Source of the DNA: Octopus bimaculoides
Taxonomy: Eukaryota
Direction of reading: 5' to 3'
NCBI RefSeq assembly: GCF_001194135.2
Contig: NC_068989.1
Span: 4,151,240 to 4,215,239 of the forward strand
Length of the DNA: 64,000 nucleotides
Positions 11,211-62,582 of the stretch are shown here, in pieces; within the stretch, counting starts at the first letter, position 1; every line of letters begins with the position of its first letter. The position numbers and the translations under genes are program-made. The notes under the pieces are model-generated. The model was not told the origin of the DNA. It made no database searches and worked only from the letters and a program-made list of their open reading frames with translations.

Positions 11211-13049
11211 TTACACAACCATAACATCAATAACTTCATTGATCTGAATATTATTAGGGTGCATAAATGGTAAAATGGAGAGAGAATGGAGTATGAAGCC
11301 CTGCGAGGTTTCCTTACTTCACTTAGTTCAAATACGCACAGTGGATAACATGTCCCTGGTAAGTGATATATTAAGATCTCCACTGGACAAAATGACCTCA
11401 TATGAGCAACGGAGGAGTACTTCTCCCGGGGACTGACCTAAACAAGGTCTGAAAAGGGTGTATTTGTAAAAGGTTAGCAATGGCTCATGTAACAAGTTTC
11501 CCTTCTCACGCCATTGAATAGAAACGCTCATGTGTGACACATCTTGGTTCGAATACTGTCGCAGAGGAACACAGAACGTAAAAGTTTCAATCTTTGCAGG
11601 CATCATTAAAATATATACAACTCAAATAGTGAATGTGACTTAAAGATTTAAATGGTTGTAATCTTCTTCAATCTTTATGAGTTCGTTTGTGGACAAGATT
11701 AAAAATTATTACAGAGCAGTTGTTTGCATTACCTCTTGCAAAAGTGCTTTGAAACAAGTGATTGATTGATTATTCTATCCAGCACGATAAATTATTCCCA
11801 AAATCTCCACCCGGGGCTCAATGCGTACCGCCATAAGATAGATGCTTCCATAGTCTTCGATCGTTGGTAAGATCATTCTGGGAAACCATGTCAAGAGCTG
11901 TCCATGCTGTGATTCTATCTCTCTAGCTCTTACATTGCCGACCTCTGTTTCTCTTTCCAATCGCTTTGTGTGGATAGGCAGTTTGTGTACTTTACTTTTC
12001 AACGACAATAGTGACTGATGATAATTTGGTTATTTGTCTCAGCTCTTCGGTTCTGACATGGTCTGAGAGATTTGCGTTTGTTATAAAGTTGCATTACACG
12101 ACACTCAATGACTTCCAGTTGACACATTCTCGCCCTTATTGTATCGATAGGAAGAGATTAACAAATCTAATGTGTTGTACAGATCTCAAGTATTATGTAA
12201 TTTCTCTACTTCCGAAACATGTATTATTAGTCAGTATTTCTTCCTGAGTTCACGGCAGAGATTGGTTTCATCATAGGTACTTAGGCTCAGTGAGAGATAA
12301 TTGTACCAACAGTGATAGCCAGATTCCTGCTTCTGTTTAAGAAATTGATAGAAGTACGTTACACTGTGTAAACTGTGAATTTCTGAGATAGAAAGCATCA
12401 GTAGCAGTACCGAATACGATTCGAACTTCCAGTTTTATTGGCTCTTGTTAACGGTGACTTGTAACCGGAAGAATACTCTGTTGTATAAGAGGGTGTACAG
12501 TTACACTGCTCAAGGATTATACGTGCAATAAGAATATAAATGCCTATTTTTAAAAGGAAAGTTTGTCAAATGCATTTGTATAGTTTAAAATACGTTTGTC
12601 CAATGTGCGATGTAAAAGGTTTGTTGTTCGTAGTGGTGCCAGATCAGAATTGTAAAGTTATACAGAATATCACAGTTCATACACGCGCTTTCTATTGTAT
12701 AATCTTTGCTTTAGATCTGGTTTCGTTTGGTTTCTACAAATGCAGCAGATCAATCAAAACTGATCGACAACGTTGTTCACTGCTGGAATGTAGAATTATC
12801 AGCAACAAAATCAGTGAATGTTTTATGATATTACGTCCCTTTACATTGTAAATTCAAATCTTTGCATTGCATTCTTCAACAGCCTATAAAAGTAAAATAC
12901 GTGTAAAATACGAGTCAAATTTGTTTTGACTTTAATCTAACGTCAAATTTAATTAAACCCTCACGCTGATACACGGGATTCAATTATACAATACATCGCA
13001 AAGCGTTACCTCCGCAACAATATTATTATTTGTTATCACTTAAGAAGCA

Positions 13050-18002: not shown

Positions 18003-18304
18003 GTGGAGGCGCAATGGCCCTGTGGTTAGGGCAGCGGACTCGTGGTCATAGGATCGCGGTTCCGATTCCCAGACCGGGCGCTGTGACTGTTTATTGAGCG
18101 AAAATACCTAAAGTCCTCGAGGCCCCGGCAGGGGATGGTGGCGGACCCTGCTGTACTCTTTCACCACAACTTTCTCTCACTCTTTCTTCCTGCTTCTGTT
18201 GTGCCTGTATTTCAAAGGGTCAGCCTTGTCACACTGTGTCACGCTGAATATCACCGAGAACTACGTTAAGGGTACACGTGTCTGTGGAGTGCTCAGCCAC
18301 TTGT
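18003..18304 (+). mobile_element. tRNA-derived SINE, family C (runs into a gap)
   Basis: GCAATGGCCCTGTGGTTAGGGCAGCGGACTCG...GGTTCCGATTCCC head. The body is shared with 57766-57960 and the tail with 38520-38680. Confidence 0.8.
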
Positions 18305-20359: not shown

Positions 20360-21500
20360 GTGTAGAGTAAGGTAAGACAGATTAGGTATGTACCTGGGTT
20401 AATATCGGGTAACGTGGGTTTAGGCAAAGAGAAATACGAAAGGTAATACAAGGGTATGATGATTTAAATTGTGTTAAGGGGTATCTGGGGTAACATGGGG
20501 TAACGTATGTAAAGCAGTGGAAATTAACTTGGGTAAATGTAGGGTACGGTAAATCATGCTTGGTATGTAGCGTAACAGGGTGGAACGTAGCGGGGACGGA
20601 AATTACGTCAGGTAAGTCTAAAGTAAGATGCGGTTAATCATATTTGGTATGGGTAATAAGGTGTGAAAGTGATGGGTAAGGTAAGTTAGTTTAGAGTAAG
20701 TAATGTAACGTAGGGCAAGGTAAACTGAGGTGGAGAAGTCTCGAGTAAAAAGGTGTAATTTAAAACAGGATAAGGTAAAGTGAGGTTGAATAGGAACAAC
20801 AATATTTAGTAAGGTAGATTAAACGTTATTGATGGGTAGTAAAACAGGGTAGATATGGTAAGATAAAGGTAAATTAATGGAGGGAGGTAGGGTAATTTCG
20901 GGTATGGTAGGGTAATTTATGGTTTAGGACATTGGTTCCCAATGAAAATAATGTGAGACAATGATTTTAAATTTAGGTACAACACCGGTAAATTTAAGAG
21001 GAGAAGCTTAGTCGCTACAAATGACCGAGTACTTGACTTGTACAGTGGTTCCCAAAGTGGACGGTATTGCCCCTATGAGGGCAGGCGAAAGTTGAAGGAA
21101 AGTGTTGAAGAAAAGTGGAGTGATAATGGGGTAGCGATTCGTGTAAAAACAACAAATAATGGGTTCATTAGGTTAAGTTTTATTTGTGAAATACAGTTGC
21201 TTTGAATTTGCTTCAGAAAGAGGTCTATGTTTGCGATGGTTAGTTGGGGCGCTAGGAATGTGTAAGGGGTGTAAAGGGGGCGGCATCATCCAAAAGTTTG
21301 GGAACTACTGGTTTAGGGTACTGTAAGGTATGGTAATACGGAAGAGTTAAAGAGAAGTAAATTAAAGTAATTTCGAAATGGATACGCTGGGTTACGTTAA
21401 GTTGAGATTTTGTAAATTAGAGCTAGCTAGGGCCGTATAATCTATGGCAGGGTCAGTTAAGTTGAGATAAACTAAGATAATATTTAAAGCAATCCTAAGG
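20360..21500 (+). repeat. Decayed (GGTAA/GGGTA)-type pentamer tract interrupted by a SINE fragment and the hAT MITE
   Basis: Roughly two dozen or more GTAA motifs in 20360-20930 with strong G/T strand bias; the tract resumes after 21311. Confidence 0.6.
21043..21310. mobile_element. hAT (Charlie-like) MITE
   Basis: TIRs CAGTGGTTCCCAAA / TTTGGGAACTACTG (13/14); 268 bp non-coding. The 8-bp TSD is not conserved. Confidence 0.65.
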
Positions 21501-22843: not shown

Positions 22844-23399
22844 GATTACACGCATACACAAACACACAATTATGTATAAATTTGGATATAGTTGGTCAGC
22901 TGTATACCTGATTTGTATTCTCGAAGTTTATAATCGACAGTATTATATTACTGGTATTACAAGTGTGTCTGACAAAAGGCAACGGAATATTTTGTCTCCG
23001 GCACTTTATATTCCGAGTTCAAATTTGGCTGTTTTACTGGTACTTTATTTTATCGATCCTGATGCCAAAACAAAATCGATCTCGGCGTTATTTGAATTCT
23101 CTGATCAAATATAACTGGGAAATACTGGTCTTTTGTTCAGGCCGGAATAATTAAAATGATCTTACTCATTGACTAATATACATTCTTCGTGGGATAATTA
23201 TTTCTAATTAACTTTTTAACGACCACTGCATGGGAAATGTTACTAATAATGCTATTAAATACAGAAAATTATTAACTTCAGCAGACATTTATACGACTTT
23301 TCCGTTACTCTAACAACAACACTAAATTTAGCCGTTTACAACGGTGAGCTTAATATTTTTCTTGTAACTGGGCACAACGCCAAGTTGGAAAGGTTTTCG

Positions 23400-23406
23400 A
23401 TGATGG

Positions 23407-23448
<42 letters not shown>

Positions 23449-23890
23449 CGATGATGATGATGATAATGATGATGATGATGATGATGATGATGAAGAGGAG
23501 GAGGAAGGGAGAATAACCATGATGATGATGATGATGAAGAGAAGGAGGAAGGAGAAAATAACCATGAAGAGGAGGAGGAAGAAGGGGAGGAGAAGAGGGA
23601 TAACCATGAATATGATGATGATTATGACGATGATGGTGTTGATGATGATTATGATGCTAAAAATACTAAGAAATGTTGACGGAGATGAAGAGGAAGATGT
23701 GACGAGGATGATGACGATAATGTGAACGATAATAAATATGGCGACGAAGATGATGCAGACGATGATGACAAACGAAAGGAAACTCCGGAAAAAGAGGAGC
23801 AGGAAAATAGTGACGATAACGTTGTTGATGATTATGATGATGATGATGATGATGACAACGAAGATAATGATGATGACGATGACGATATAG
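23400..23890. repeat. (GAT)n/(GAG)n-rich low-complexity tract
   Basis: Direct inspection. Confidence 0.9.
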
Positions 23891-24261
23891 TCGATTGAAT
23901 TACCTCCAGTTACTTAATTGATCAACGCAGATATGGCAACACTAAACGATTTGATTATTTGCCAACCTAGCAACCGCCATTTATTTTCTCAATGAACTAC
24001 CGAGAGGGGCCTTTGATAGAGACGGATGATAGTTTTAGACTGACCGTTAGCTTTGCTAGAAATAGCAGTTAAATTACCCGCAAATCACTCCACCCAAACA
24101 TATTTATCTTTTTTTTAATTACATAAAAAGAAATATAACGTACATAAAACTAAATTAGATCTGAAAATAAGATGGATCGGCCATGTCTAATATTTCTAAT
24201 GTATTGACAATGTTGAGCCGGATTTAACAAAAATAGCAATGGATCCGGCAAGTAAGAAGAC

Positions 24262-27080: not shown

Positions 27081-28060
27081 CACACAAGGGTACATATGCA
27101 TAAATCAAACAGCAATCACACATATACAGCCCTATATAAACTATAATCGTATATACTTATCTACAGGTACAGACACAAACATGTACACATACACACACAC
27201 TCACACTCATACACACACATATATGTATGTATATGTATGTATATGTATATATATCCACGTATACAAATGCATTCATTAATACTTACATTCATAAAACACA
27301 TACAGTAAATTTGTTTCGATTTTCATGTTAGGGACTGAGAATATGATGCAAGCTGACATGTAATTTATAGTGGATGTAAGTTATACAACGATTGGCGCCC
27401 ATTTGCTAATATGGTGTTTGACTCATTGTAAAATCTGATTACCGTTTACCGTATAACCACTTTTTATTGATTCCATAACTATATTTCAAATGTATGTCTT
27501 TCTAATGTAATGAAGAATAGTAAAATACATATGCAATTTAGCATTACGTTGTAGTTGTTGTTGATTTGGTTTTTATAGGTACGCACAATTAAATCATCGT
27601 AACGCAACGATAATTTAGTTAATAATATGCGTAAATATATTTCTTGATTAATGGGCAGAGTAAACGGGACTTATGCAATATATACATACATACACACACA
27701 CACACATATATNNNNNNNNNNNNNNNNNNNNNNNNNNNNNNNNNNNNNNNNNNNNNNNNNNNNNNNNNNNNNNNNNNNNNNNNNNNNNNNNNNNNNNNNN
27801 NNNNNNNNNNNNNNNNNNNNNNNNNNNNNNNNNNNNNNNNNNNNNNNNNNNNNNNNNNNNNNNNNNNNNNNNNNNNNNNNNNNNNNNNNNNNNNNNNNNN
27901 NNNNNNNNNNNNNNNNNNNNNNNNNNNNNNNNNNNNNNNNNNNNNNNNNNNNNNNNNNNNNNNNNNNNNNNNNNNNNNNNNNNNNNNNNNNNNNNNNNNN
28001 NNNNNNNNNNNNNNNNNNNNNNNNNNNNNNNNNNNNNNNNNNNCAAACACACACACACAA

Positions 28061-28091
<31 letters not shown>

Positions 28092-28940
28092 CATATACTC
28101 AATAATAAGAAGCTCAGTAAACACTACTGTTATTTTCAAGTTTCATGTAACACACTCGTGTTTCTGTAATCCCCATCAAGCAAATATCTCAATGCACGAT
28201 CATTCCTTCCTCATCCCTAGTGTTGGGTTCTGACATTCTCTAGCAAAGTATATTCATATTCATCACCTAATGGATAGAAATGTCAAACATCCTTATTCTC
28301 ATTGCCATACTAGCGATAGATATTATGCCTTCGGTCTCGCTGCTATTTGGTAGTGTTAACACGTCGATAACGATGATAATAGTTTCTCGTGTCCCTGATG
28401 GTTTTTTTGAATACGCTCCAAGTATCGTAGTTCAGATGTTCGTAACGCGAGAAGTTACAGAGGTCATGGTGTTAGTTTTTTATTTCTATTGCATTTATTT
28501 ATTTGATTTTCTTGTCAGTAAGCTGTTCTTTATCTTGGTGGTTGTAACTGTGGCATTGGTTATCATAGATACTTCACTTGCATTTACCGTAATGATGGTT
28601 ATGAATCGCAATGATGTATTTGATCAATGCTGGTTTTGATCTGGTGTAGCTGGAACTGTTTGTGTTCATATAAATGTGATCGTCGTGTTTACTGCGTAAT
28701 TGAAATATCACACATATTGTATTATATTATTCTATTTTCTATCATGTATTATATTATATAATATTGTTTTATGCTATATCGTATTATATCATATTGTATT
28801 ATATTATATTATATTATATTATATCATATTATATCATTTTGCAGGAAAACACACAATCTAATTATTGTAATAAAATTATTATTTATTTGAAATGATTTAA
28901 ACAAATTAATATGCTTTATTTTAAAATGAATTTAAAGTAT

Positions 28941-28995
28941 TTTCTCTTTTTCTTTTGCAGGTAAGTTTATATTTTTGCTGGTGAAATTGGTAAGA
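28941..28995 (+). promoter_or_regulatory. Candidate recursive splice site (ratchet point) with 29-nt cryptic RS-exon
   Basis: TTTCTCTTTTTCTTTTGCAG|GTAAGT at 28960/28961, followed by a second donor TTG|GTAAGA at 28990. Confidence 0.6.
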
Positions 28996-29069
28996 TTGAC
29001 TTCATTTTCTTTATATCATGTACGCGTATCGCTGTGTATTTACGGGTATGTGAATACGCGATTTAATGC

Positions 29070-29124
<55 letters not shown>

Positions 29125-30140
29125 AGTGCGCGCATTTTATCACTTTAAATTTCAAAATATTTAAAAATAAAAACAAGCAACAATTAATCAATCAGCCATA
29201 ACTGACATCCGAAACACAAATGAACATTTTTTTTATACATCAAATGCGGTTTCGTTATGCTGAGTGGGTCATCTACTCACATCNNNNNNNNNNNNNNNNN
29301 NNNNNNNNNNNNNNNNNNNNNNNNNNNNNNNNNNNNNNNNNNNNNNNNNNNNNNNNNNAGTTAAATATGAATTTCAAACTGAATAAAAGAATTAAGATAT
29401 TTTGCGTATTCTTGACTTATAACAAATATATTGTACGTAAATTTCAAAAACGAAATCTTATAAGGACCCTAAGTGTTATAAGGATTCTGGTTGAGAACCA
29501 CTAGACTAGATGAACAGACAAAAACAAATCATCATCATTAGCTAGTTAGAACTCACGAATTATAAACAAATGCCGTATTTATTTGTGTAAGTTGGGCTGT
29601 TTTATATTTGATGTTTACCAAAAAAAAAAAAAGAACTGCGGTGCCACGAATATACGTAGCAAAACTAAACCTATGAAAGGGAAACACTTCCTGCCAAAAT
29701 TTTAAAACTAAATCAGAGGTACGGCTTTTATACATGCTCAACTTATATATGAGCAAATCTGGTTGTTGTTTTTTTTTAATGTCATTGATTTGGCCATATT
29801 ATCTCAATAATTGAAGCGAGCTGCTCGACCAGCTACATACAGCAGTCATATCGTGCGCATGCATGTGTGTTAGGTAAGATGAGAGAGTATTAGCAGATCT
29901 CTGGTTCTGGCTATTCATATTAATGATAACACCTTCTCAATTCAAATACTAAGCGGGTTGGACATGGTGTATTTAATTACAGATCATTAGATAGATTTTA
30001 TATTATACAGAGAACTCAACACAAGAGTGCCATAAAATTATAGAATGCGTGAAACACAAAACTAATAGAAAGATTATCTAATACATTTGTGATGGTGTGT
30101 ATGCATGTATCTGAGAGCATCTCTCTCTCTCACTCTGTAT

Positions 30141-38094: not shown

Positions 38095-38180
38095 ATAAAA
38101 ACGTATATACAGTCATATCTGTGTGTGTGGGGTGTGTGGGTGTGTGTGTGTGCGTGTGTGTGTGTTTGTATGTTTGTATG

Positions 38181-38380
38181 TCTGCGTTTGTTCCCACAAC
38201 ATCGCTTGAAAACCGATGCTGGTGTGTTTACGTCCCCGTAACTTAGCGGTTCGGCAAAACAGACCGATAGAATAAGTACTAAGATTACAAAGAGTAAGTC
38301 CCGGGGTCGATTAGCTCGACGAAAGGCGGTGCTGCAGCATGGCCGCAGTCAAATGACTGAATCAAGTAATAGAATAACAG
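38181..38380 (+). mobile_element. SINE family A, 3' half
   Basis: CCCCGTAACTTAGCGGTTCGGCAAAA...CAGCATGGCCGCAGTCAAATGACTGAA. Confidence 0.85.
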
Positions 38381-38417
38381 AGTATATTAACGTACCCGTT
38401 TATTATATCTTGATAGA

Positions 38418-55109: not shown

Positions 55110-55470
55110 GAAAATGGATGACATCTCAAGTCTTGATTACTGGAATAGTCTAGAGAAAATCAAATATTCCAACAGCAATGCCCACATGACGCTGATACGT
55201 ACCTTAACATTCACACAAGGCTTGCTGTCCGTGCCATCCGTGCCATCTACAAAAGAACATGCTCGCGTCAGATCACAACACAAAGACAGGACTGTTTCAC
55301 CTCAACAGACTCTGTTCTCTCTAACGCCATGCCAAGACACACAAGGAAAGAAAAGAAATTTCGTAACATTCAAACGGTCCTGGTCTAATATCTTCTACAA
55401 ATCTCAGATAAACCACCTGCACCCGGATATAAGCGCCGAAAGTACTACAGTAATATTAAACTTCATTATT
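55110..55470 (+). pseudogene. Degenerate CR1/L2-group LINE 3' end
   Basis: LDYWNSLEKIKYS and, in a shifted frame, SDKPPAPGYKR resemble the L.YW.RL..L.LYSL and IPD.P..PGY.R motifs at CR1/L2-group C-termini. Confidence 0.6.
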
Positions 55471-56564
55471 TAGCATTTCCAAGTGGTGCCATGAACGTAG
55501 GTGTGGCCTCGGTAAATTCTGGTCGAAACTTATCTCAGTATCTAAGTTATCTAAGAGTACAAACAATACCCACGGTGAAATATGGAATAATCCACATATC
55601 GAAACCGCTAGAATAATCTAGAATTGAAAATAAACCATTGTATGTAAATTGCGAGGAAATTATGCGCATTGAACCAACCACCATTTCATCATCACAGGTC
55701 TATACGAAAAACAGGAAAGAACTATGGCAAATCATAGACAGGAAAAGAGAAATGAAGAAATGAATAACAAATTTTATTTTGGGTTATTTCAAATATGAAA
55801 TGCTATAAATAATTAAATTGAGTTAAGTATGACTTTCCTGTTACACGCACATACTCATCTGTGCAAACACATACATATATGTATACATACATATATATAT
55901 ANNNNNNNNNNNNNNNNNNNNNNNNNNNNNNNNNNNNNNNNNNNNNNNNNNNNNNNNNNNNNNNNNNNNNNNNNNNNNNNNNNNNNNNNNNNNNNNNNNN
56001 NNNNNNNNNNNNNNNNNNNNNNNNNNNNNNNNNNNNNNNNNNNNNNNNNNNNNNNNNNNNNNNNNNNNNNNNNNNNNNNNNNNNNNNNNNNNNNNNNNNN
56101 NNNNNNNNNNNNNNNNNNNNNNNNNNNNNNNNNNNNNNNNNNNNNNNNNNNNNNNNNNNNNNNNNNNNNNNNNNNNNNNNNNNNNNNNNNNNNNNNNNNN
56201 NNNNNNNNNNNNNNNNNNNNNNNNNNNNNNNNNNNNNNNNNNNNNNNNNNNNNNNNNNNNNNNNNNNNNNNNNNNNNNNNNNNNNNNNNNNNNNNNNNNN
56301 NNNNNNNNNNNNNNNNNNNNNNNNNNNNNNNNNNNNNNNNNNNNNNNNNNNNNNNNNNNNNNNNNNNNNNNNNNNNNNNNNNNNNNNNNNNNNNNNNNNN
56401 NNNNNNNNNNNNNNNNNNNNNNNNNNNNNNNNNNNNNNNNNNNNNNNNNNNNNNNNNNNNNNNNNNNNNNNNNNNNNNNNNNNNNNNNNNNNNNNNNNNN
56501 NNNNNNNNNNNNNNNNNNNNNNNNNNNNNNNNNNNNNNNNNNNNNNNNNNNNNNNNNNNNNNNN

Positions 56565-56613
<49 letters not shown>

Positions 56614-57765
56614 GTATGTATGTATGTATGTATATGTATTAGATGGTTTGGAGATGATGTACAGGAATTATATATTAGAAAAAATAATAAGGTACTCAGA
56701 TATCTGGATGGTTGTACATTTACAGAATTTTATTAATTAATATGTCACATGTTTTTGTAAATTAGCGCTTGCATCTATTCTTGTAGATTCTCCAGATTTA
56801 ATTTTTTCTTCGGAGGATTTGTCTCCTTTTATAGTATTATTGAATGTGTAGGGGTGGAAAGATATATAGTATAGTTAAAGGGGTGAGGAATGGGGAGAAG
56901 GTGAGAGAGAGTGCGTGTGTGTGTGTTTGTGCTGGTGTGTGTGTGTCTGTGTGTGCGTGCGTGTATGTGTGTGCCTGTGTATCTGAAAGGAGTACCAATA
57001 GGAAAGAGAAGGAAAGGTGAAAGAAGAAAGAAGTATATTGTGTTTACAGCTGGTCAGTTCAATGACAATTTGATTCTTGGCCTTTAAAAATGGCAAAACC
57101 AGGTGGCTATTTAAGGTCGGGCATTGTTTGGAAGAAAGTTGTTTTTCTAAAAAGTTGCTAAAATAAGTAGGGGGGGGGGACGGTCACTTTAATCAACAAT
57201 ACCCTTCCCCAAAATGTATGACCAAATATAACTTTACTGCGGTTTATTTGATAATTTTAATTTACTTATCTTGTTGTTGCAGACGCCGATAATTATATTT
57301 ATTGCCGTCTTTAGAAAATTATATTAGATATTTGATAATTGTGTTGCTTTTAAAGTAATTTGTTATTTTTCTCATTCTATCTATCGTGTATTAATCAACG
57401 TTTGAGAGCCAAACACCTGTTATTAAGACATTTCTTTAATTTCTACATAGTGATGAATGATAACGTTTACTACGCTACGTCTCATAGCATTTGGTGCTGA
57501 TTTTATTAATGTTTTCTTCTAATTGTGTCTTATGTATTTGGTGTTGTTGTTGTTGTTGTTTGTGGTGGTGGTGTTCATGTAGTGCTGGTGTTCAGTCCTA
57601 GCTCACCTCCGATCGAGCAGATGCATGATCAAAACTATCCCGTCCGTGATAATCACGTCTTTTAACTATTTGCACAGTATCCAGTAACTCACCATCCAAT
57701 ATGCTCATGGCGTATGTGTTCCCCCCAGCTGGACGGGACGCCAGTCCATCGCAGCGTTACTCAGG

Positions 57766-57960
57766 AAACAGGAAGAAAGAGTGAGAGAAAGTTGGGGCGA
57801 AAGAGTATAACAGGGTCACCCCCCCCCCTTTCGGAGCATCGTGGAGCTTTTATGCATTTTCGCTCAATAAACACACACAACGCACGGTCTGGGAATCGAA
57901 ATCGCGATCCTCCGACCGCGAGTCCGCTGACCTAACCACTGGGCCATTGCGTCTCCACTT
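57766..57960 (-). mobile_element. SINE family C, 5' part
   Basis: Reverse complement of the head and body at 18003-18195. Confidence 0.8.
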
Positions 57961-59876
57961 TGAATATAATGCATATATATATTATTTTTTCCTAACGTTT
58001 CTAAAGTCTTTTCATACATTTGTGTGTGTTGTTCTCTGCCTAGATCCTTAATTCCTTTCTGCTTCTCAGTCTGTGTTTGTTCTAATTCTGAATTTTGCTA
58101 TTTAACATGACATTTGCATCTCATTAATTGTCATCGAACTTGTGATGACGTATTTTTATATCCTTAATTTTGCGTAAAATCTAGTCAACTGCTGTCTACA
58201 ATAGCGTTTTCAGATATCATTTTCAGCATACATTCCGAAGTCATGTCAGTAGGCTGCGTACTCTCCACCATCGTATATTCACCCAAGCACCGTCTTATAT
58301 ATTATGGTAGTTAAATATTTTACCACCAGACAAAATGGGAGTCGAGAATAAAAAAAGCACCTGGAATATTCTGTTTCCAATTCGATTTTAACATTCTCTA
58401 TTTTGTTTGTCAGTATAGCAATATTAATTTTTTTGATAATTTTGTTGTTATAGACATTCTGATCCCCGTGGCTTGTGGCTTTACTAAGTAATAACACTGA
58501 TATCTCATGCACTGTCATTCATGATTTTGCTAGAAACTTCGGAATGCCACAGTTGATATAGAACCGAATTTTCGAGCCTTTACCACAGGAATATACACTC
58601 AGACGCATATTCACAAATGCATACACACACGCACGCATGCACACGCATGCACACGCATGCACACACATACATTAATATATATAGGTGTATGTCTGTTTGT
58701 GGCTGTGCGCATGTATGTATGTATGTACACTTTCCAAATTCCAGTTACGAATAACGAATAAATCCATTTTGACGTCGCTGCTTTGCATACTCAAAATATA
58801 TTGTAATATTGACAAACAGCTGAAGAAGCAAACTACTTCGCCGGTCAACTCAGGGAATTGTGCTCGAGAAAGTAATCGGTTTATATGTTTGGGAAAGAAA
58901 TCTATTTCTCTTCTCTTTGTAAACGAATGATAAACAACGAATTATTATACAGCAACCTCACCACTAACATGTAAGAGACGCAGGTTTAAACAGGAGGCAT
59001 GGACTTCACATATTCCATTTTTTAAGTTTTGGTATATCAATATATCGATAAATTCTCGTTTCAGTTCTACACACTGTACAGTAAATCTGAGTTTAGGATC
59101 GACCGAATGTGATCGACAAGCTTTTGGGATTCAACATTAAATCCGATTCGCTCTCTTTGACGTTGATATTAACCTTGAAAAATACATTACCGACACACAA
59201 CTTCCTTCATTGCATGAATCTATACATTCGTCGCCCAATGCCCAGGAAATCAATATATTTGATGAACGCTACAGAGATAAGAGATAAGCAGGATACAAAC
59301 TAAAAATGTGACGCATTTTCATTGCAATTTTGAAACGATATCATATCCTGTACATCACTAGTACTATAGAGAAACGCATGAACATAAAAAAGCCCATATT
59401 TTCTTCTTTCCTTATAATAAAAGCATCGTTCTAACTCACCTAGTCCAAAGAAATACACAGTAGAATAAAGCATAGCTGTGCAATTAATCAATGACAAAAT
59501 CGGTAATAGCTTTCCTAGCGGAGTTTTCACTAGTCAGAGGTAGGAGGACTCGTATTAAGGATGAGACCAAAGGCAATATATGACAATTATAGCTCTAGAA
59601 AATGTTCAGGAATAGAAACAGTAATTATAATAGCAAAAGCTTCAATTAACAATCAGAAATGCAACAATAGCCCACACATTTTCAAAGCTAATACGAGAAT
59701 ATAACATGGCAAACAGCCCCTGGTTTTCTGGTATAATACAGCAATTATAGTTTTCGTATTATCATTTACATCTCTCAGAATTCCAGCAAATTTGCAAACG
59801 GGGGACATTGATTTGAGTTTTATGGTACACTCAATCCACACATGTACTATCCGCATGCGCACAAGACATGTGTCTG

Positions 59877-60925: not shown

Positions 60926-60989
<64 letters not shown>

Positions 60990-61170
60990 ATCACCATCGC
61001 TTGACAACCGATGCTGGTGTGTTTACGACCCCGTAATCTAGTGGTTCGGCTTAAGAGACCGATAGAATAAGTACTAGTCTTACAAAAAAATAATTCCTGG
61101 AGTTGATTTGTTCGACTAAAAGCGGTGCTCCAGCATGGCCGCAGTCAAATGACTGAAACAAATAAAAGAA
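60990..61170 (+). mobile_element. SINE family A, 3' half
   Basis: CATCGCTTGACAACCGATGCTGGTGTGTTTA...GCGGTGCTCCAGCATGGCCGCAGTCAAATGACTGAAAC. Confidence 0.85.
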
Positions 61171-61428: not shown

Positions 61429-61653
61429 CTATGTGTGTATGTGTTTGTATGTCTGTGTTTGTCCCCCCAACATCGCTTGACAACCGATGCTGGTGTGTTT
61501 ATGTCCCCGTAACTTAGCGGTTCGGCAAAAAAGACCGATGGAATAAGTACTAGGCTTCCAAAGAATAAGTCCTGGGGTCGATTTGCTCGACTAAAGGCGG
61601 TGCTCCAGCATGGCCACAGTCAAAAGACTGAAACAAGTAAAAGAGTAAAAGAG
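61231..61653 (+). mobile_element. Full-length tRNA-derived SINE, family A (Octopus OR-type, CORE-like)
   Basis: A box TGGCTGTGTGG, B box GGTTCAGTCCC, CORE-like CTTGGGCAAGTG, internal (TA/TG)n linker, and a tail ending GACTGAAACAAGTAAAAGAGTAAAAGAG. Confidence 0.85.
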
Positions 61654-61918: not shown

Positions 61919-62582
61919 CCTAATTGTGCAACTGTTTATGCATGTGCATCGTTTGCATATTTGTTTGTGCATGCATATGTGTGCATATAGATGTACATGC
62001 CATGAGACATAGCCGTTTATATACCGTTTATATACCTATGTCTGTAGATGTGTGTGTTCGCGTGTATGTAAATGTATTCAATAAGCATCAGTTACATGAT
62101 GTCATTCGCAAGATGGCGTTAATTCATTCGGTAAATCAATATGTCCACCCATGAATTGTATGTCAACCAATACACCGTGTAATTGCATAACAATAAAATA
62201 GGCCGCGCAATGGATATATAGTTAAGTGGTTTGATTCGCAATCACGTAGACTCAGGGAGGAATATTAAGCAAGGATTTTCCATAAAATCTTAGATCAAAA
62301 CCTTAAAATATTGTTTGATCCTAGCGGTGACTTTTCGATACCTTTCAGTACTGATAGAACCAATTTAATGCTATTCCGGCCAGACGTTCTCCTTCTTTCT
62401 TAGACTATTTGCGACTATATTTTCCAATGTAGAAGGTGGACGAAATATAATTAAGATCGGTCGCCAATGTTTTAGAGAGCCACTTGGGAATTCGAAGCTT
62501 CCTTATGCGCCATTTGTATGTATGTTAATATGTGTGTGTGCGTAAGTGTATATGAATGTGTGTTTCTGTGTCTATGTATCCA

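What the first reader, a model, noticed from the sequence alone, without database searches (positions are those of the whole stretch)
28941..28995. Recursive-splicing-like ratchet point with a 29-nt cryptic exon
Seen: a 16-nt pure pyrimidine tract plus GCAG is immediately followed by the perfect donor GTAAGT, and a second donor (TTG|GTAAGA) lies 29 nt downstream. The ~270 nt upstream are extremely AT-rich and nearly AG-free, in non-repetitive context. Established: AG|GTAAGT zero-length exons with a short downstream cryptic exon are the signature of recursive splicing in long Drosophila and vertebrate neuronal introns. Inference: the window lies in a very long + strand intron removed stepwise. 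I know of no demonstration of this in cephalopods. Alternative: an AT-rich non-coding exon 28845-28960 using the upstream TTTTGCAG at 28844.
Basis: partly seen in the sequence, partly recalled or inferred. Interest (0 to 1): 0.75.

Follow-up and report, generated by a model that had tools for sequence, protein, structure and literature searches.

The report
Recursive-splice-like motif in octopus DNA
A near-perfect splice acceptor joined directly to a splice donor really is present in this octopus sequence and is unlikely to be a pure accident, but nothing available here shows the region is transcribed, so recursive splicing is a plausible, untested reading.

Summary
The motif is real. A 17-nt pure pyrimidine tract (28940-28956) and GCAG (28957-28960) abut GTAAGT (28961-28966), and TTG|GTAAGA follows 29 nt downstream. 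Of 285 AG|GT junctions in the window (both strands), it is the only one with at least 16/17 pyrimidines upstream. The two other GTAAGT donors lie in a GGTAAG-rich satellite. Markov models expect 0.0002-0.002 such motifs per window.

One descriptor is wrong. The AT-rich, AG-poor upstream stretch is largely an (ATATT)n microsatellite, so the context is not "non-repetitive".

Every sequence-level feature of fly ratchet points is met: TT at -5/-6, a strong tract, and a short out-of-frame cryptic exon with a second donor.

The interpretation could not be tested. I found no coding exon, Pfam domain or RNA gene anywhere in the 64 kb. No cephalopod genome or transcript data were reachable. Strand, intron membership, usage and conservation all remain unknown.

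Transposon remnants place the window in Octopus, closest to O. bimaculoides.

My probabilities are judgement:
- recursive site: about 0.35
- chance or non-functional: about 0.3
- ordinary AT-rich exon 28845-28960: about 0.17

If real, it is a new member of a known kind. Interest is modest.

The parts
28714..28834 (.). (ATATT)n microsatellite. It accounts for most of the AT-rich, AG-poor upstream stretch.
   Evidence: TRF: period 5, 23.8 copies, 72% matches. Direct-repeat family D1.
28837..28844 (+). Upstream acceptor-like TTTTGCAG|G. This would be the 3' splice site of the alternative exon 28845-28960.
   Evidence: Sequence. 11/17 pyrimidines at -20..-4. TTTTGCAGG occurs only twice in the window, here and at 28953.
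28845..28960 (+). Candidate AT-rich non-coding exon (rival reading): 116 nt, 16% GC, stops in all three frames.
28906..28920 (+). Branch-point-like yUnAy motifs: TTAAT (A at 28909, 51 nt from the 3' splice site) and TTTAT (A at 28918, 42 nt).
   Evidence: Pattern scan. Inferred only.
28936..28937 (+). Intervening AG (in AAG|T), 23 nt upstream of the proposed 3' splice site. It lies between the branch-point-like motifs and the CAG and is a blemish on the acceptor.
28940..28956 (+). 17-nt pure polypyrimidine tract with TT at -5/-6.
   Evidence: It is the only AG|GT junction of 285 with at least 16/17 Y. TT at -5/-6 is found in 99.5% of fly ratchet points (bioRxiv 10.1101/006163).
28957..28960 (+). 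GCAG: the proposed 3' splice site, with the last intron base at 28960.
28961..28966 (+). GTAAGT: a consensus 5' splice site that would be regenerated once an upstream exon is ligated to 28961.
28961..28989 (+). Proposed 29-nt cryptic RS-exon. It is out of frame (29 mod 3 = 2), with stops in two of three frames.
   Evidence: Fly cryptic RS-exons are short (~50 nt) and generally out of frame (PMC8605326).
28990..28995 (+). Second donor TTG|GTAAGA, which would define the cryptic exon.
   Evidence: Chance of a GTAAG in +15..+80 is 4.9%.
29046..29051 (+). Further donor-like site CGG|GTATGT (85-nt exon). CAG|GTGTGT at 29072 would give a 111-nt exon.
29072..29121 (+). (GT)25 microsatellite, a UG repeat if transcribed on the + strand.
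   Evidence: TRF. 2.9% of + strand positions lie within 150 nt upstream of such a tract.
27712..28043 (.). Assembly gap on the left of the 1,240-bp contig that carries the site. The right gap is 29284-29358.

Best explanation
A + strand composite splice element that would act as a recursive splice site (ratchet point) if it lies in the sense strand of a long intron.

Inferred mechanism:
1. U2AF and U2 recognise the strong acceptor. It consists of branch-point-like TTAAT/TTTAT at -51/-42, the 17-nt pyrimidine tract with TT at -5/-6, and CAG ending at 28960.
2. U1 binds the downstream donor GTAAGA at 28990. Together these define a 29-nt cryptic exon (28961-28989).
3. The upstream exon is ligated to 28961, removing the first part of the intron as a lariat.
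4. Ligation places the exon end in front of GTAAGT, regenerating a consensus 5' splice site.
5. That site outcompetes the weaker GTAAGA donor. The cryptic exon is therefore removed with the remaining intron and leaves no trace in the mRNA.

Shown: the sequence elements, their exact spacing and their statistical rarity. Inferred: transcription, strand, usage and order of events.
For: - The motif is exact.
- It is the best of 285 AG|GT junctions on both measures.
- Markov expectation is 2e-4 to 2e-3 per window, and about 20-fold lower once a second donor within 80 nt is required.
- TT at -5/-6 and an unusually strong pyrimidine tract match fly ratchet points. Fly recursive 3' splice sites are stronger than ordinary ones (PMC6110457).
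- A short, out-of-frame cryptic exon with its own donor matches the fly RS-exon model (PMC8605326).
- No coding exon was detected within +/-12 kb or anywhere in the 64 kb. This fits a deep-intronic position.
- Weak + strand hints: all four Y12NYAG|R matches are on + and none on -. AATAAA/ATTAAA occur 94 times on + and 117 on -.
Against: - There is no evidence of transcription, host gene, strand, junction reads or conservation.
- Absence of exons is equally compatible with intergenic DNA.
- An AG at 28936 lies between the branch-point-like motifs and the CAG.
- The 29-nt cryptic exon is shorter than the ~50 nt typical of flies.
- The pyrimidine tract sits in low-complexity, microsatellite-rich DNA. 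It could be the complement of an A-rich retroposon tail.
- This genome is rich in SINEs, like vertebrate genomes. In vertebrates, sense-strand enrichment of the motif is only about 1.5-fold.
- A second TTTTGCAGG 116 nt upstream favours an ordinary-exon reading.
- The site is on a 1.24-kb contig between gaps, so its orientation relative to neighbouring sequence depends on scaffolding.
Confidence: 0.35

Rival explanations
1. Chance juxtaposition with no splicing role. A T-rich low-complexity tract, possibly the complement of an A-rich retroposon tail, happens to be followed by GCAGGTAAGT in DNA that is untranscribed or transcribed from the other strand.
For: - Pure pyrimidine tracts of at least 16 nt are common here: 19 on each strand in 58 kb.
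- The surroundings are microsatellites.
- Genome-wide, Markov models still allow roughly 8-80 Y10 motifs, or 0.07-4.5 Y16 motifs, by chance in 2.7 Gb.
- The finding was selected after the fact by a reader free to flag any pattern.
- There is no gene evidence in the window.
Against: - The per-window expectation is 2e-4 to 2e-3, and about 1e-5 to 1e-4 with the second donor.
- TT at -5/-6, a weaker second donor and the out-of-frame cryptic exon all agree with the functional model at once.
- TTTTGCAGG is duplicated 116 nt away, which is itself improbable.
Confidence: 0.3
2. Ordinary exon boundary. Under this reading 28845-28960 is a 116-nt AT-rich non-coding exon (UTR, lncRNA or poison exon). Its acceptor is TTTTGCAG|G at 28844 and its normal donor is CAG|GTAAGT at 28961. 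The pyrimidine tract is merely the 3' end of that exon.
For: - TTTTGCAGG occurs only twice in the window, and both copies are on the + strand at exactly these two positions (11/12 identity over 12 nt).
- No local duplication explains this.
- CAG|GTAAGT is a 9/9 match to the standard 5' splice-site consensus (direct reading).
- The exon has stops in all frames, consistent with a non-coding exon.
Against: - The upstream acceptor has a poor pyrimidine tract (11/17) and is embedded in an (ATATT)n repeat.
- 16% GC is extremely low for an exon.
- A 17-nt pure pyrimidine tract ending 4 nt before a donor has no role in this model. By my estimate from the counts, its per-position rate is about 3e-4.
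Confidence: 0.17
3. A cassette or cryptic exon that begins at 28961 and is sometimes included. It would be 29 nt long, or 85 or 111 nt using GTATGT at 29046 or CAG|GTGTGT at 29072. The adjacent UG repeat might keep it repressed through a TDP-43/TBPH-type binding protein.
For: - A strong acceptor and several downstream donors are present.
- (GT)25 starts exactly at the 111-nt donor.
- Only 2.9% of + strand positions lie this close upstream of a (GT) tract of at least 10 units.
- From my own knowledge, UG-repeat-flanked cryptic exons are the known targets of TDP-43 in mammals. This was not tested here.
Against: - The perfect GTAAGT at the first six exon bases would then be coincidence, at about 2-3e-4.
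- GT microsatellites are very abundant in this window: 12 on the + strand.
- There is no expression evidence.
Confidence: 0.08
4. The motif belongs to an unrecognised multi-copy repeat family. The independence assumptions behind the chance estimates would then fail.
For: - The window is packed with SINE and transposon remnants.
- No cephalopod repeat library or genome was available to exclude this.
Against: - No second copy of 28100-29283 exists in the 64-kb window, although several SINE families recur there.
- The adjacent 122-aa ORF has no relatives among 5.8 billion proteins.
Confidence: 0.07

Closest known systems
Drosophila intronic ratchet points / zero-nucleotide recursive splice sites (Ubx, kuz, Bx, luna; Hatton 1998, Burnette 2005, Duff 2015, Joseph 2018, Pai 2018)
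   Same: - The (Y)n-N-CAG|GTAAGT core.
- TT at -5/-6.
- A very strong pyrimidine tract.
- A short, out-of-frame downstream cryptic exon ending in a second, somewhat weaker donor.
   Different: - The cryptic exon is 29 nt, against about 50 nt in flies.
- An AG lies 23 nt upstream of the acceptor.
- Location in a long sense-strand intron, constitutive usage and ultraconservation are all untested.
- The organism is a cephalopod, for which I found no report.
Vertebrate RS-exons in long neuronal genes (Sibley 2015; Blazquez 2018, PMC6224609)
   Same: An exon-definition step across an exon that starts with GTAAGT, followed by competition between the regenerated donor and the exon's own donor.
   Different: - Vertebrate RS-exons are usually longer and can be annotated, included exons.
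- Motif enrichment in vertebrate long introns is weak, about 1.5-fold (PMC2773006).
- No data on inclusion are available here.
Zero-length exon of rat alpha-tropomyosin (as discussed in PMC2773006)
   Same: A 3' splice site followed immediately by a 5' splice site.
   Different: That element is thought to mark a pseudo-exon or NMD-linked alternative exon rather than to subdivide a long intron. Which of the two applies here is unknown.
Exonisation of antisense retroposon tails (Alu-type; from my own knowledge)
   Same: A T-rich tract that may derive from the complement of an A-rich tail and supplies a polypyrimidine tract in front of an AG.
   Different: No retroposon body was identified next to the tract. 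This concerns the origin of the tract, not its function.

Membership tests
Recursive splice site (Drosophila-type ratchet point) | [quoted passage not shown] | tested here: met
   17-nt Y tract + GCAG|GTAAGT at 28940-28966. Best of 285 AG|GT junctions.
Recursive splice site (Drosophila-type ratchet point) | TT at positions -5 and -6, with an unusually prominent pyrimidine tract (196 of 197 fly ratchet points) | tested here: met
   T at 28955 and 28956. Criterion taken from bioRxiv 10.1101/006163.
Recursive splice site (Drosophila-type ratchet point) | Short downstream cryptic RS-exon closed by a second donor, generally out of frame (~50 nt in flies) | tested here: met
   TTG|GTAAGA at 28990 gives a 29-nt exon, 29 mod 3 = 2. 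This is shorter than the typical ~50 nt (PMC8605326).
Recursive splice site (Drosophila-type ratchet point) | Lies on the sense strand of a very long intron | not testable with these tools
   No exon, Pfam, Rfam or tRNA evidence in the 64 kb.
Recursive splice site (Drosophila-type ratchet point) | Use in vivo: exon-to-ratchet-point junction reads, sawtooth nascent RNA profile, recursive lariats | not testable with these tools
   No RNA data are accessible.
Recursive splice site (Drosophila-type ratchet point) | Strong evolutionary conservation confined to the acceptor|donor core | not testable with these tools
   No cephalopod genomes are in the searchable collections. Exact-pattern scans of metagenome and prokaryote collections returned nothing, as expected.
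Recursive splice site (Drosophila-type ratchet point) | Usable branch point with an AG-free interval down to the acceptor | tested here: inconclusive
   yUnAy motifs lie at -51 and -42, but an AAG at 28936-28937 lies between them and the CAG.
Ordinary internal exon (28845-28960) | Competent acceptor and donor flanking a sequence found in mature RNA | tested here: inconclusive
   The donor is perfect. The acceptor TTTTGCAG|G is present but has only 11/17 Y and sits inside a microsatellite. The exon is 16% GC with stops in all frames. No RNA data.

The most novel reading that the evidence does not exclude
This is a genuinely used, conserved ratchet point in a very long, probably neuronal, octopus gene. 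It would be the first recursive splice site shown in a cephalopod or any lophotrochozoan. That would imply the exon-definition form of recursive splicing, with a very short 29-nt cryptic exon, dates back to the bilaterian ancestor and is used in the giant introns of cephalopod genomes.
Probability: 0.3. Interest if true: 0.5.

Novelty: new member of a known kind. Interest (0 to 1): 0.3.

Why it matters
Recursive splicing is documented in flies and vertebrates. Motif enrichment has also been reported in other insects and in sea urchin (PMC2773006). I found no report for molluscs or cephalopods. Octopus genomes combine very long introns with a vertebrate-like load of SINEs. They are therefore a useful test of whether ratchet points or other aids are used to remove giant introns.

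A single motif cannot settle that question. It does provide a concrete, cheap target for RT-PCR or total RNA-seq. It also motivates a genome-wide count of the motif on sense versus antisense strands. If the site is used, the 29-nt cryptic exon would sit at the short end of what exon definition is thought to tolerate.

Tried and rejected
1. Comparative data through nearby ORFs.
- Exact look-ups of ORFs 28280-28639, 28975-29148, 55114-55473 and 12540-12851, and of an O. bimaculoides TE protein, found nothing on record.
- A homology search of the 122-aa ORF next to the site found nothing.
- I therefore obtained no orthologous locus and no transcript contig.

2. Host-gene search.
- Pfam scans of complex stop-free ORFs of at least 48 aa across the window returned 0 families. 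A few microsatellite-like ORFs were dropped from the 1-16.6 kb and 57.8-64 kb sets.
- Rfam and ARAGORN found nothing.
- 77 filtered ORFs from 16.5-41.6 kb, concatenated and searched against 5.8 billion proteins, gave one hit. It was a SINE-derived N-terminus of a dynein gene model, not a local exon.

3. Exact-pattern scans of the metagenome and prokaryote genome collections returned 0 hits, as expected for animal DNA.

4. The idea that the two TTTTGCAGG copies reflect a 116-nt tandem duplication is rejected. The alignment score equals the shuffled mean.

5. The other two AGGTAAGT sites (20610, 20679) are rejected as splice signals. They lie in a GGTAAG-rich degenerate satellite.

6. The acidic, coding-looking stretch 23.35-23.9 kb is rejected as an upstream exon. 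It is spread over three frames and is low-complexity.

7. The bacterial promoter/terminator scan is irrelevant to this eukaryotic locus.

8. Base skew over the whole window is nil (A 18597, T 18619, G 10400, C 10368). It therefore says nothing about strand.

Full report
**What is in the sequence**

The + strand reads ...aaagta TTTTCTCTTTTTCTTTT GCAG|GTAAGT ttatatttttgctggtgaaaTTG|GTAAGA....
- The pure pyrimidine tract spans 28940-28956.
- GCAG occupies 28957-28960 and GTAAGT 28961-28966.
- The second donor has its GT at 28990, 29 nt after 28961.
- CAG|GTAAGT is a 9/9 match to the standard 5' splice-site consensus (direct reading).
- T occupies both -5 and -6 relative to the acceptor.

The coordinates and the description are correct.

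**Is it more than chance?**

- Y10-N-CAG-GTAAGT occurs once in the window on both strands and in none of 100 dinucleotide-preserving shuffles.
- Markov models of order 1-4, trained on the window itself, expect 1.7e-4 to 1.7e-3 matches per window. For the 16-pyrimidine version they expect 1.6e-6 to 1e-4. Scaled to a 2.7-Gb genome this is 8-80 and 0.07-4.5.
- I scored all 285 AG|GT junctions in the window. This one is the only junction with at least 16 of 17 pyrimidines at -20..-4. It is one of three with a perfect GTAAGT.
- The other two (20610, 20679) lie in a degenerate GGTAAG-rich satellite and are not splice signals.
- A GTAAG within +15..+80 of a random position occurs 4.9% of the time.

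The whole composite is therefore expected about 1e-5 to 1e-4 times per window. That is not negligible across a whole genome, and the pattern was chosen after the fact. Even so, it is not what this sequence produces casually.

The 270 nt upstream are indeed 84% A+T. They hold only two AG dinucleotides (28843, 28936), against 6.7 expected from local composition. Only 2-3% of 269-nt windows have two or fewer.

However, 28714-28834 is an (ATATT)n microsatellite, and that explains most of this. (GT)25 follows at 29072-29121. The site sits on a 1,240-bp contig bounded by N gaps at 27712-28043 and 29284-29358. The context is therefore low-complexity draft sequence.

It is non-repetitive only in one sense: no other copy of 28100-29283 exists in the window.

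**Fine anatomy**

- Branch-point-like yUnAy motifs lie 51 and 42 nt upstream (A at 28909 and 28918). An AAG at 28936-28937 lies between them and the CAG, which is a blemish on the acceptor.
- The 29-nt interval is out of frame and has stops in two frames.
- Further donor-like sites give possible exons of 85 nt (CGG|GTATGT at 29046) and 111 nt (CAG|GTGTGT at 29072, where the GT repeat starts).

One unexpected detail remains unexplained. TTTTGCAGG occurs only twice in the 64 kb, with 0.3 expected. Both copies are on the + strand, 116 nt apart, at 28837 and 28953. They are 11/12 identical over 12 nt. No duplication of the intervening sequence explains this.

That exon would be 16% GC with stops in all frames, and its acceptor has only 11/17 pyrimidines inside the microsatellite.

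**Comparison with known recursive sites**

- Duff et al. report that 196 of 197 fly ratchet points have TT at -5/-6 and a more prominent pyrimidine tract than ordinary introns (bioRxiv 10.1101/006163).
- Pai et al. find recursive 3' splice sites stronger than ordinary ones (PMC6110457).
- Joseph and Lai describe a short cryptic RS-exon of about 50 nt. It is poorly conserved, generally out of frame, and closed by a donor that loses to the regenerated one. They report more than 500 ratchet points in flies (PMC8605326).

All of these sequence-level features are met here. The only departure is the shorter cryptic exon.

Shepard et al. give a useful base rate. [quoted passage not shown] The enrichment is only 1.5-fold in human (PMC2773006). 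Where octopus falls is unknown. Its SINE-rich genome resembles vertebrates in that respect.

**Context**

- Taxon. A reverse-transcriptase-tail ORF at 50724-50936 (-) has its best hits, 93-77% identity, exclusively in Octopus bimaculoides proteins. The cephalopod assignment is therefore supported.
- Genes. I found none. Pfam scans of complex ORFs of at least 48 aa across the window returned no family. Rfam and tRNA scans were empty.
- Annotated proteins. I concatenated 77 filtered ORFs of at least 44 aa from 16.5-41.6 kb and searched them against 5.8 billion proteins. The only hit was the first ~97 residues of an O. bimaculoides dynein model. Those residues are a SINE present twice in the window (18005-18282 +, 57765-57968 -). 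The remaining 2,700 residues have no match.
- Genome access. Look-ups showed the O. bimaculoides genome is not in the gene-position collection.

Host gene, strand, intron length, usage and conservation therefore could not be tested.

Weak strand hints exist. All four Y12NYAG|R matches and all three MAG|GTRAGT matches are on the + strand. Poly(A)-signal hexamers number 94 on + and 117 on -. The counts are too small to carry weight.

**Verdict**

Its defining biological features are untested.

My probabilities are judgement, not computation:
- about 0.35 for a functional recursive site
- about 0.30 for a non-functional coincidence in untranscribed or antisense DNA
- about 0.17 for an ordinary AT-rich non-coding exon ending at 28960
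- the remainder for an included cryptic or cassette exon, or a repeat-borne motif

If real, it would extend a known mechanism to cephalopods. I found no paper reporting this. That would be a new member of a known kind, of moderate interest to specialists, and cheaply testable by RT-PCR or total RNA-seq.

Noticed in passing
window 20400-20950 (+): Degenerate satellite rich in GGTAAG, GGTAAA and GGTAGG. It contains the window's only other AGGTAAGT matches (20610, 20679). It forms a dense cluster of 5'-splice-site-like hexamers on the + strand.
   Followed up: partly
window 28837-28845 and 28953-28961 (+): TTTTGCAGG occurs only twice in the 64 kb (0.3 expected). Both copies are on the + strand, 116 nt apart, and no duplication of the sequence between them exists.
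   Followed up: yes
window 18005-18282 (+) and 57765-57968 (-): A SINE-like repeat forms residues 5-97 of the O. bimaculoides dynein heavy chain model A0A0L8HIS0. The rest of that protein is absent from the window. A repeat was probably taken into that public gene model by mistake.
   Followed up: partly
window 38161-38382 (+), 61432-61653 (+), 60987-61086 (+), 44567-44757 (-): Four copies (86-91% identical) of a second SINE-like element. ARAGORN does not call them as tRNA-like.
   Followed up: no
window 48678-49064 (-) and 50724-50936 (-): Two transposon remnants. One is mariner-like with frameshifts, recognised by eye but not called by Pfam. The other is a reverse-transcriptase-tail ORF 93% identical to O. 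bimaculoides A0A0L8GZ77. Both are on the - strand.
   Followed up: partly
window 23354-23900 (+): Purine-rich GAT/GAA/GAG stretch that reads as poly-Asp/Glu in three different frames with no continuous ORF. It looks coding but is probably low-complexity DNA.
   Followed up: partly
window 62406-62518 (+): Exon-like candidate: pyrimidine-rich acceptor ttctccttctttcttag|A, an open frame, and donor TTT|GTATGT. It was covered by the Pfam scan (no family) but not by a homology search.
   Followed up: no
window 29072-29121 (+): (GT)25 begins exactly at a CAG|GT donor-like site 111 nt after the proposed acceptor. On + strand RNA this would be a UG repeat next to a potential cryptic exon.
   Followed up: partly
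whole window: There are 18 N gaps totalling 6,016 bases, and microsatellites are very dense. The finding sits on a 1,240-bp contig (28044-29283), so its orientation relative to its neighbours depends on scaffolding.
   Followed up: yes
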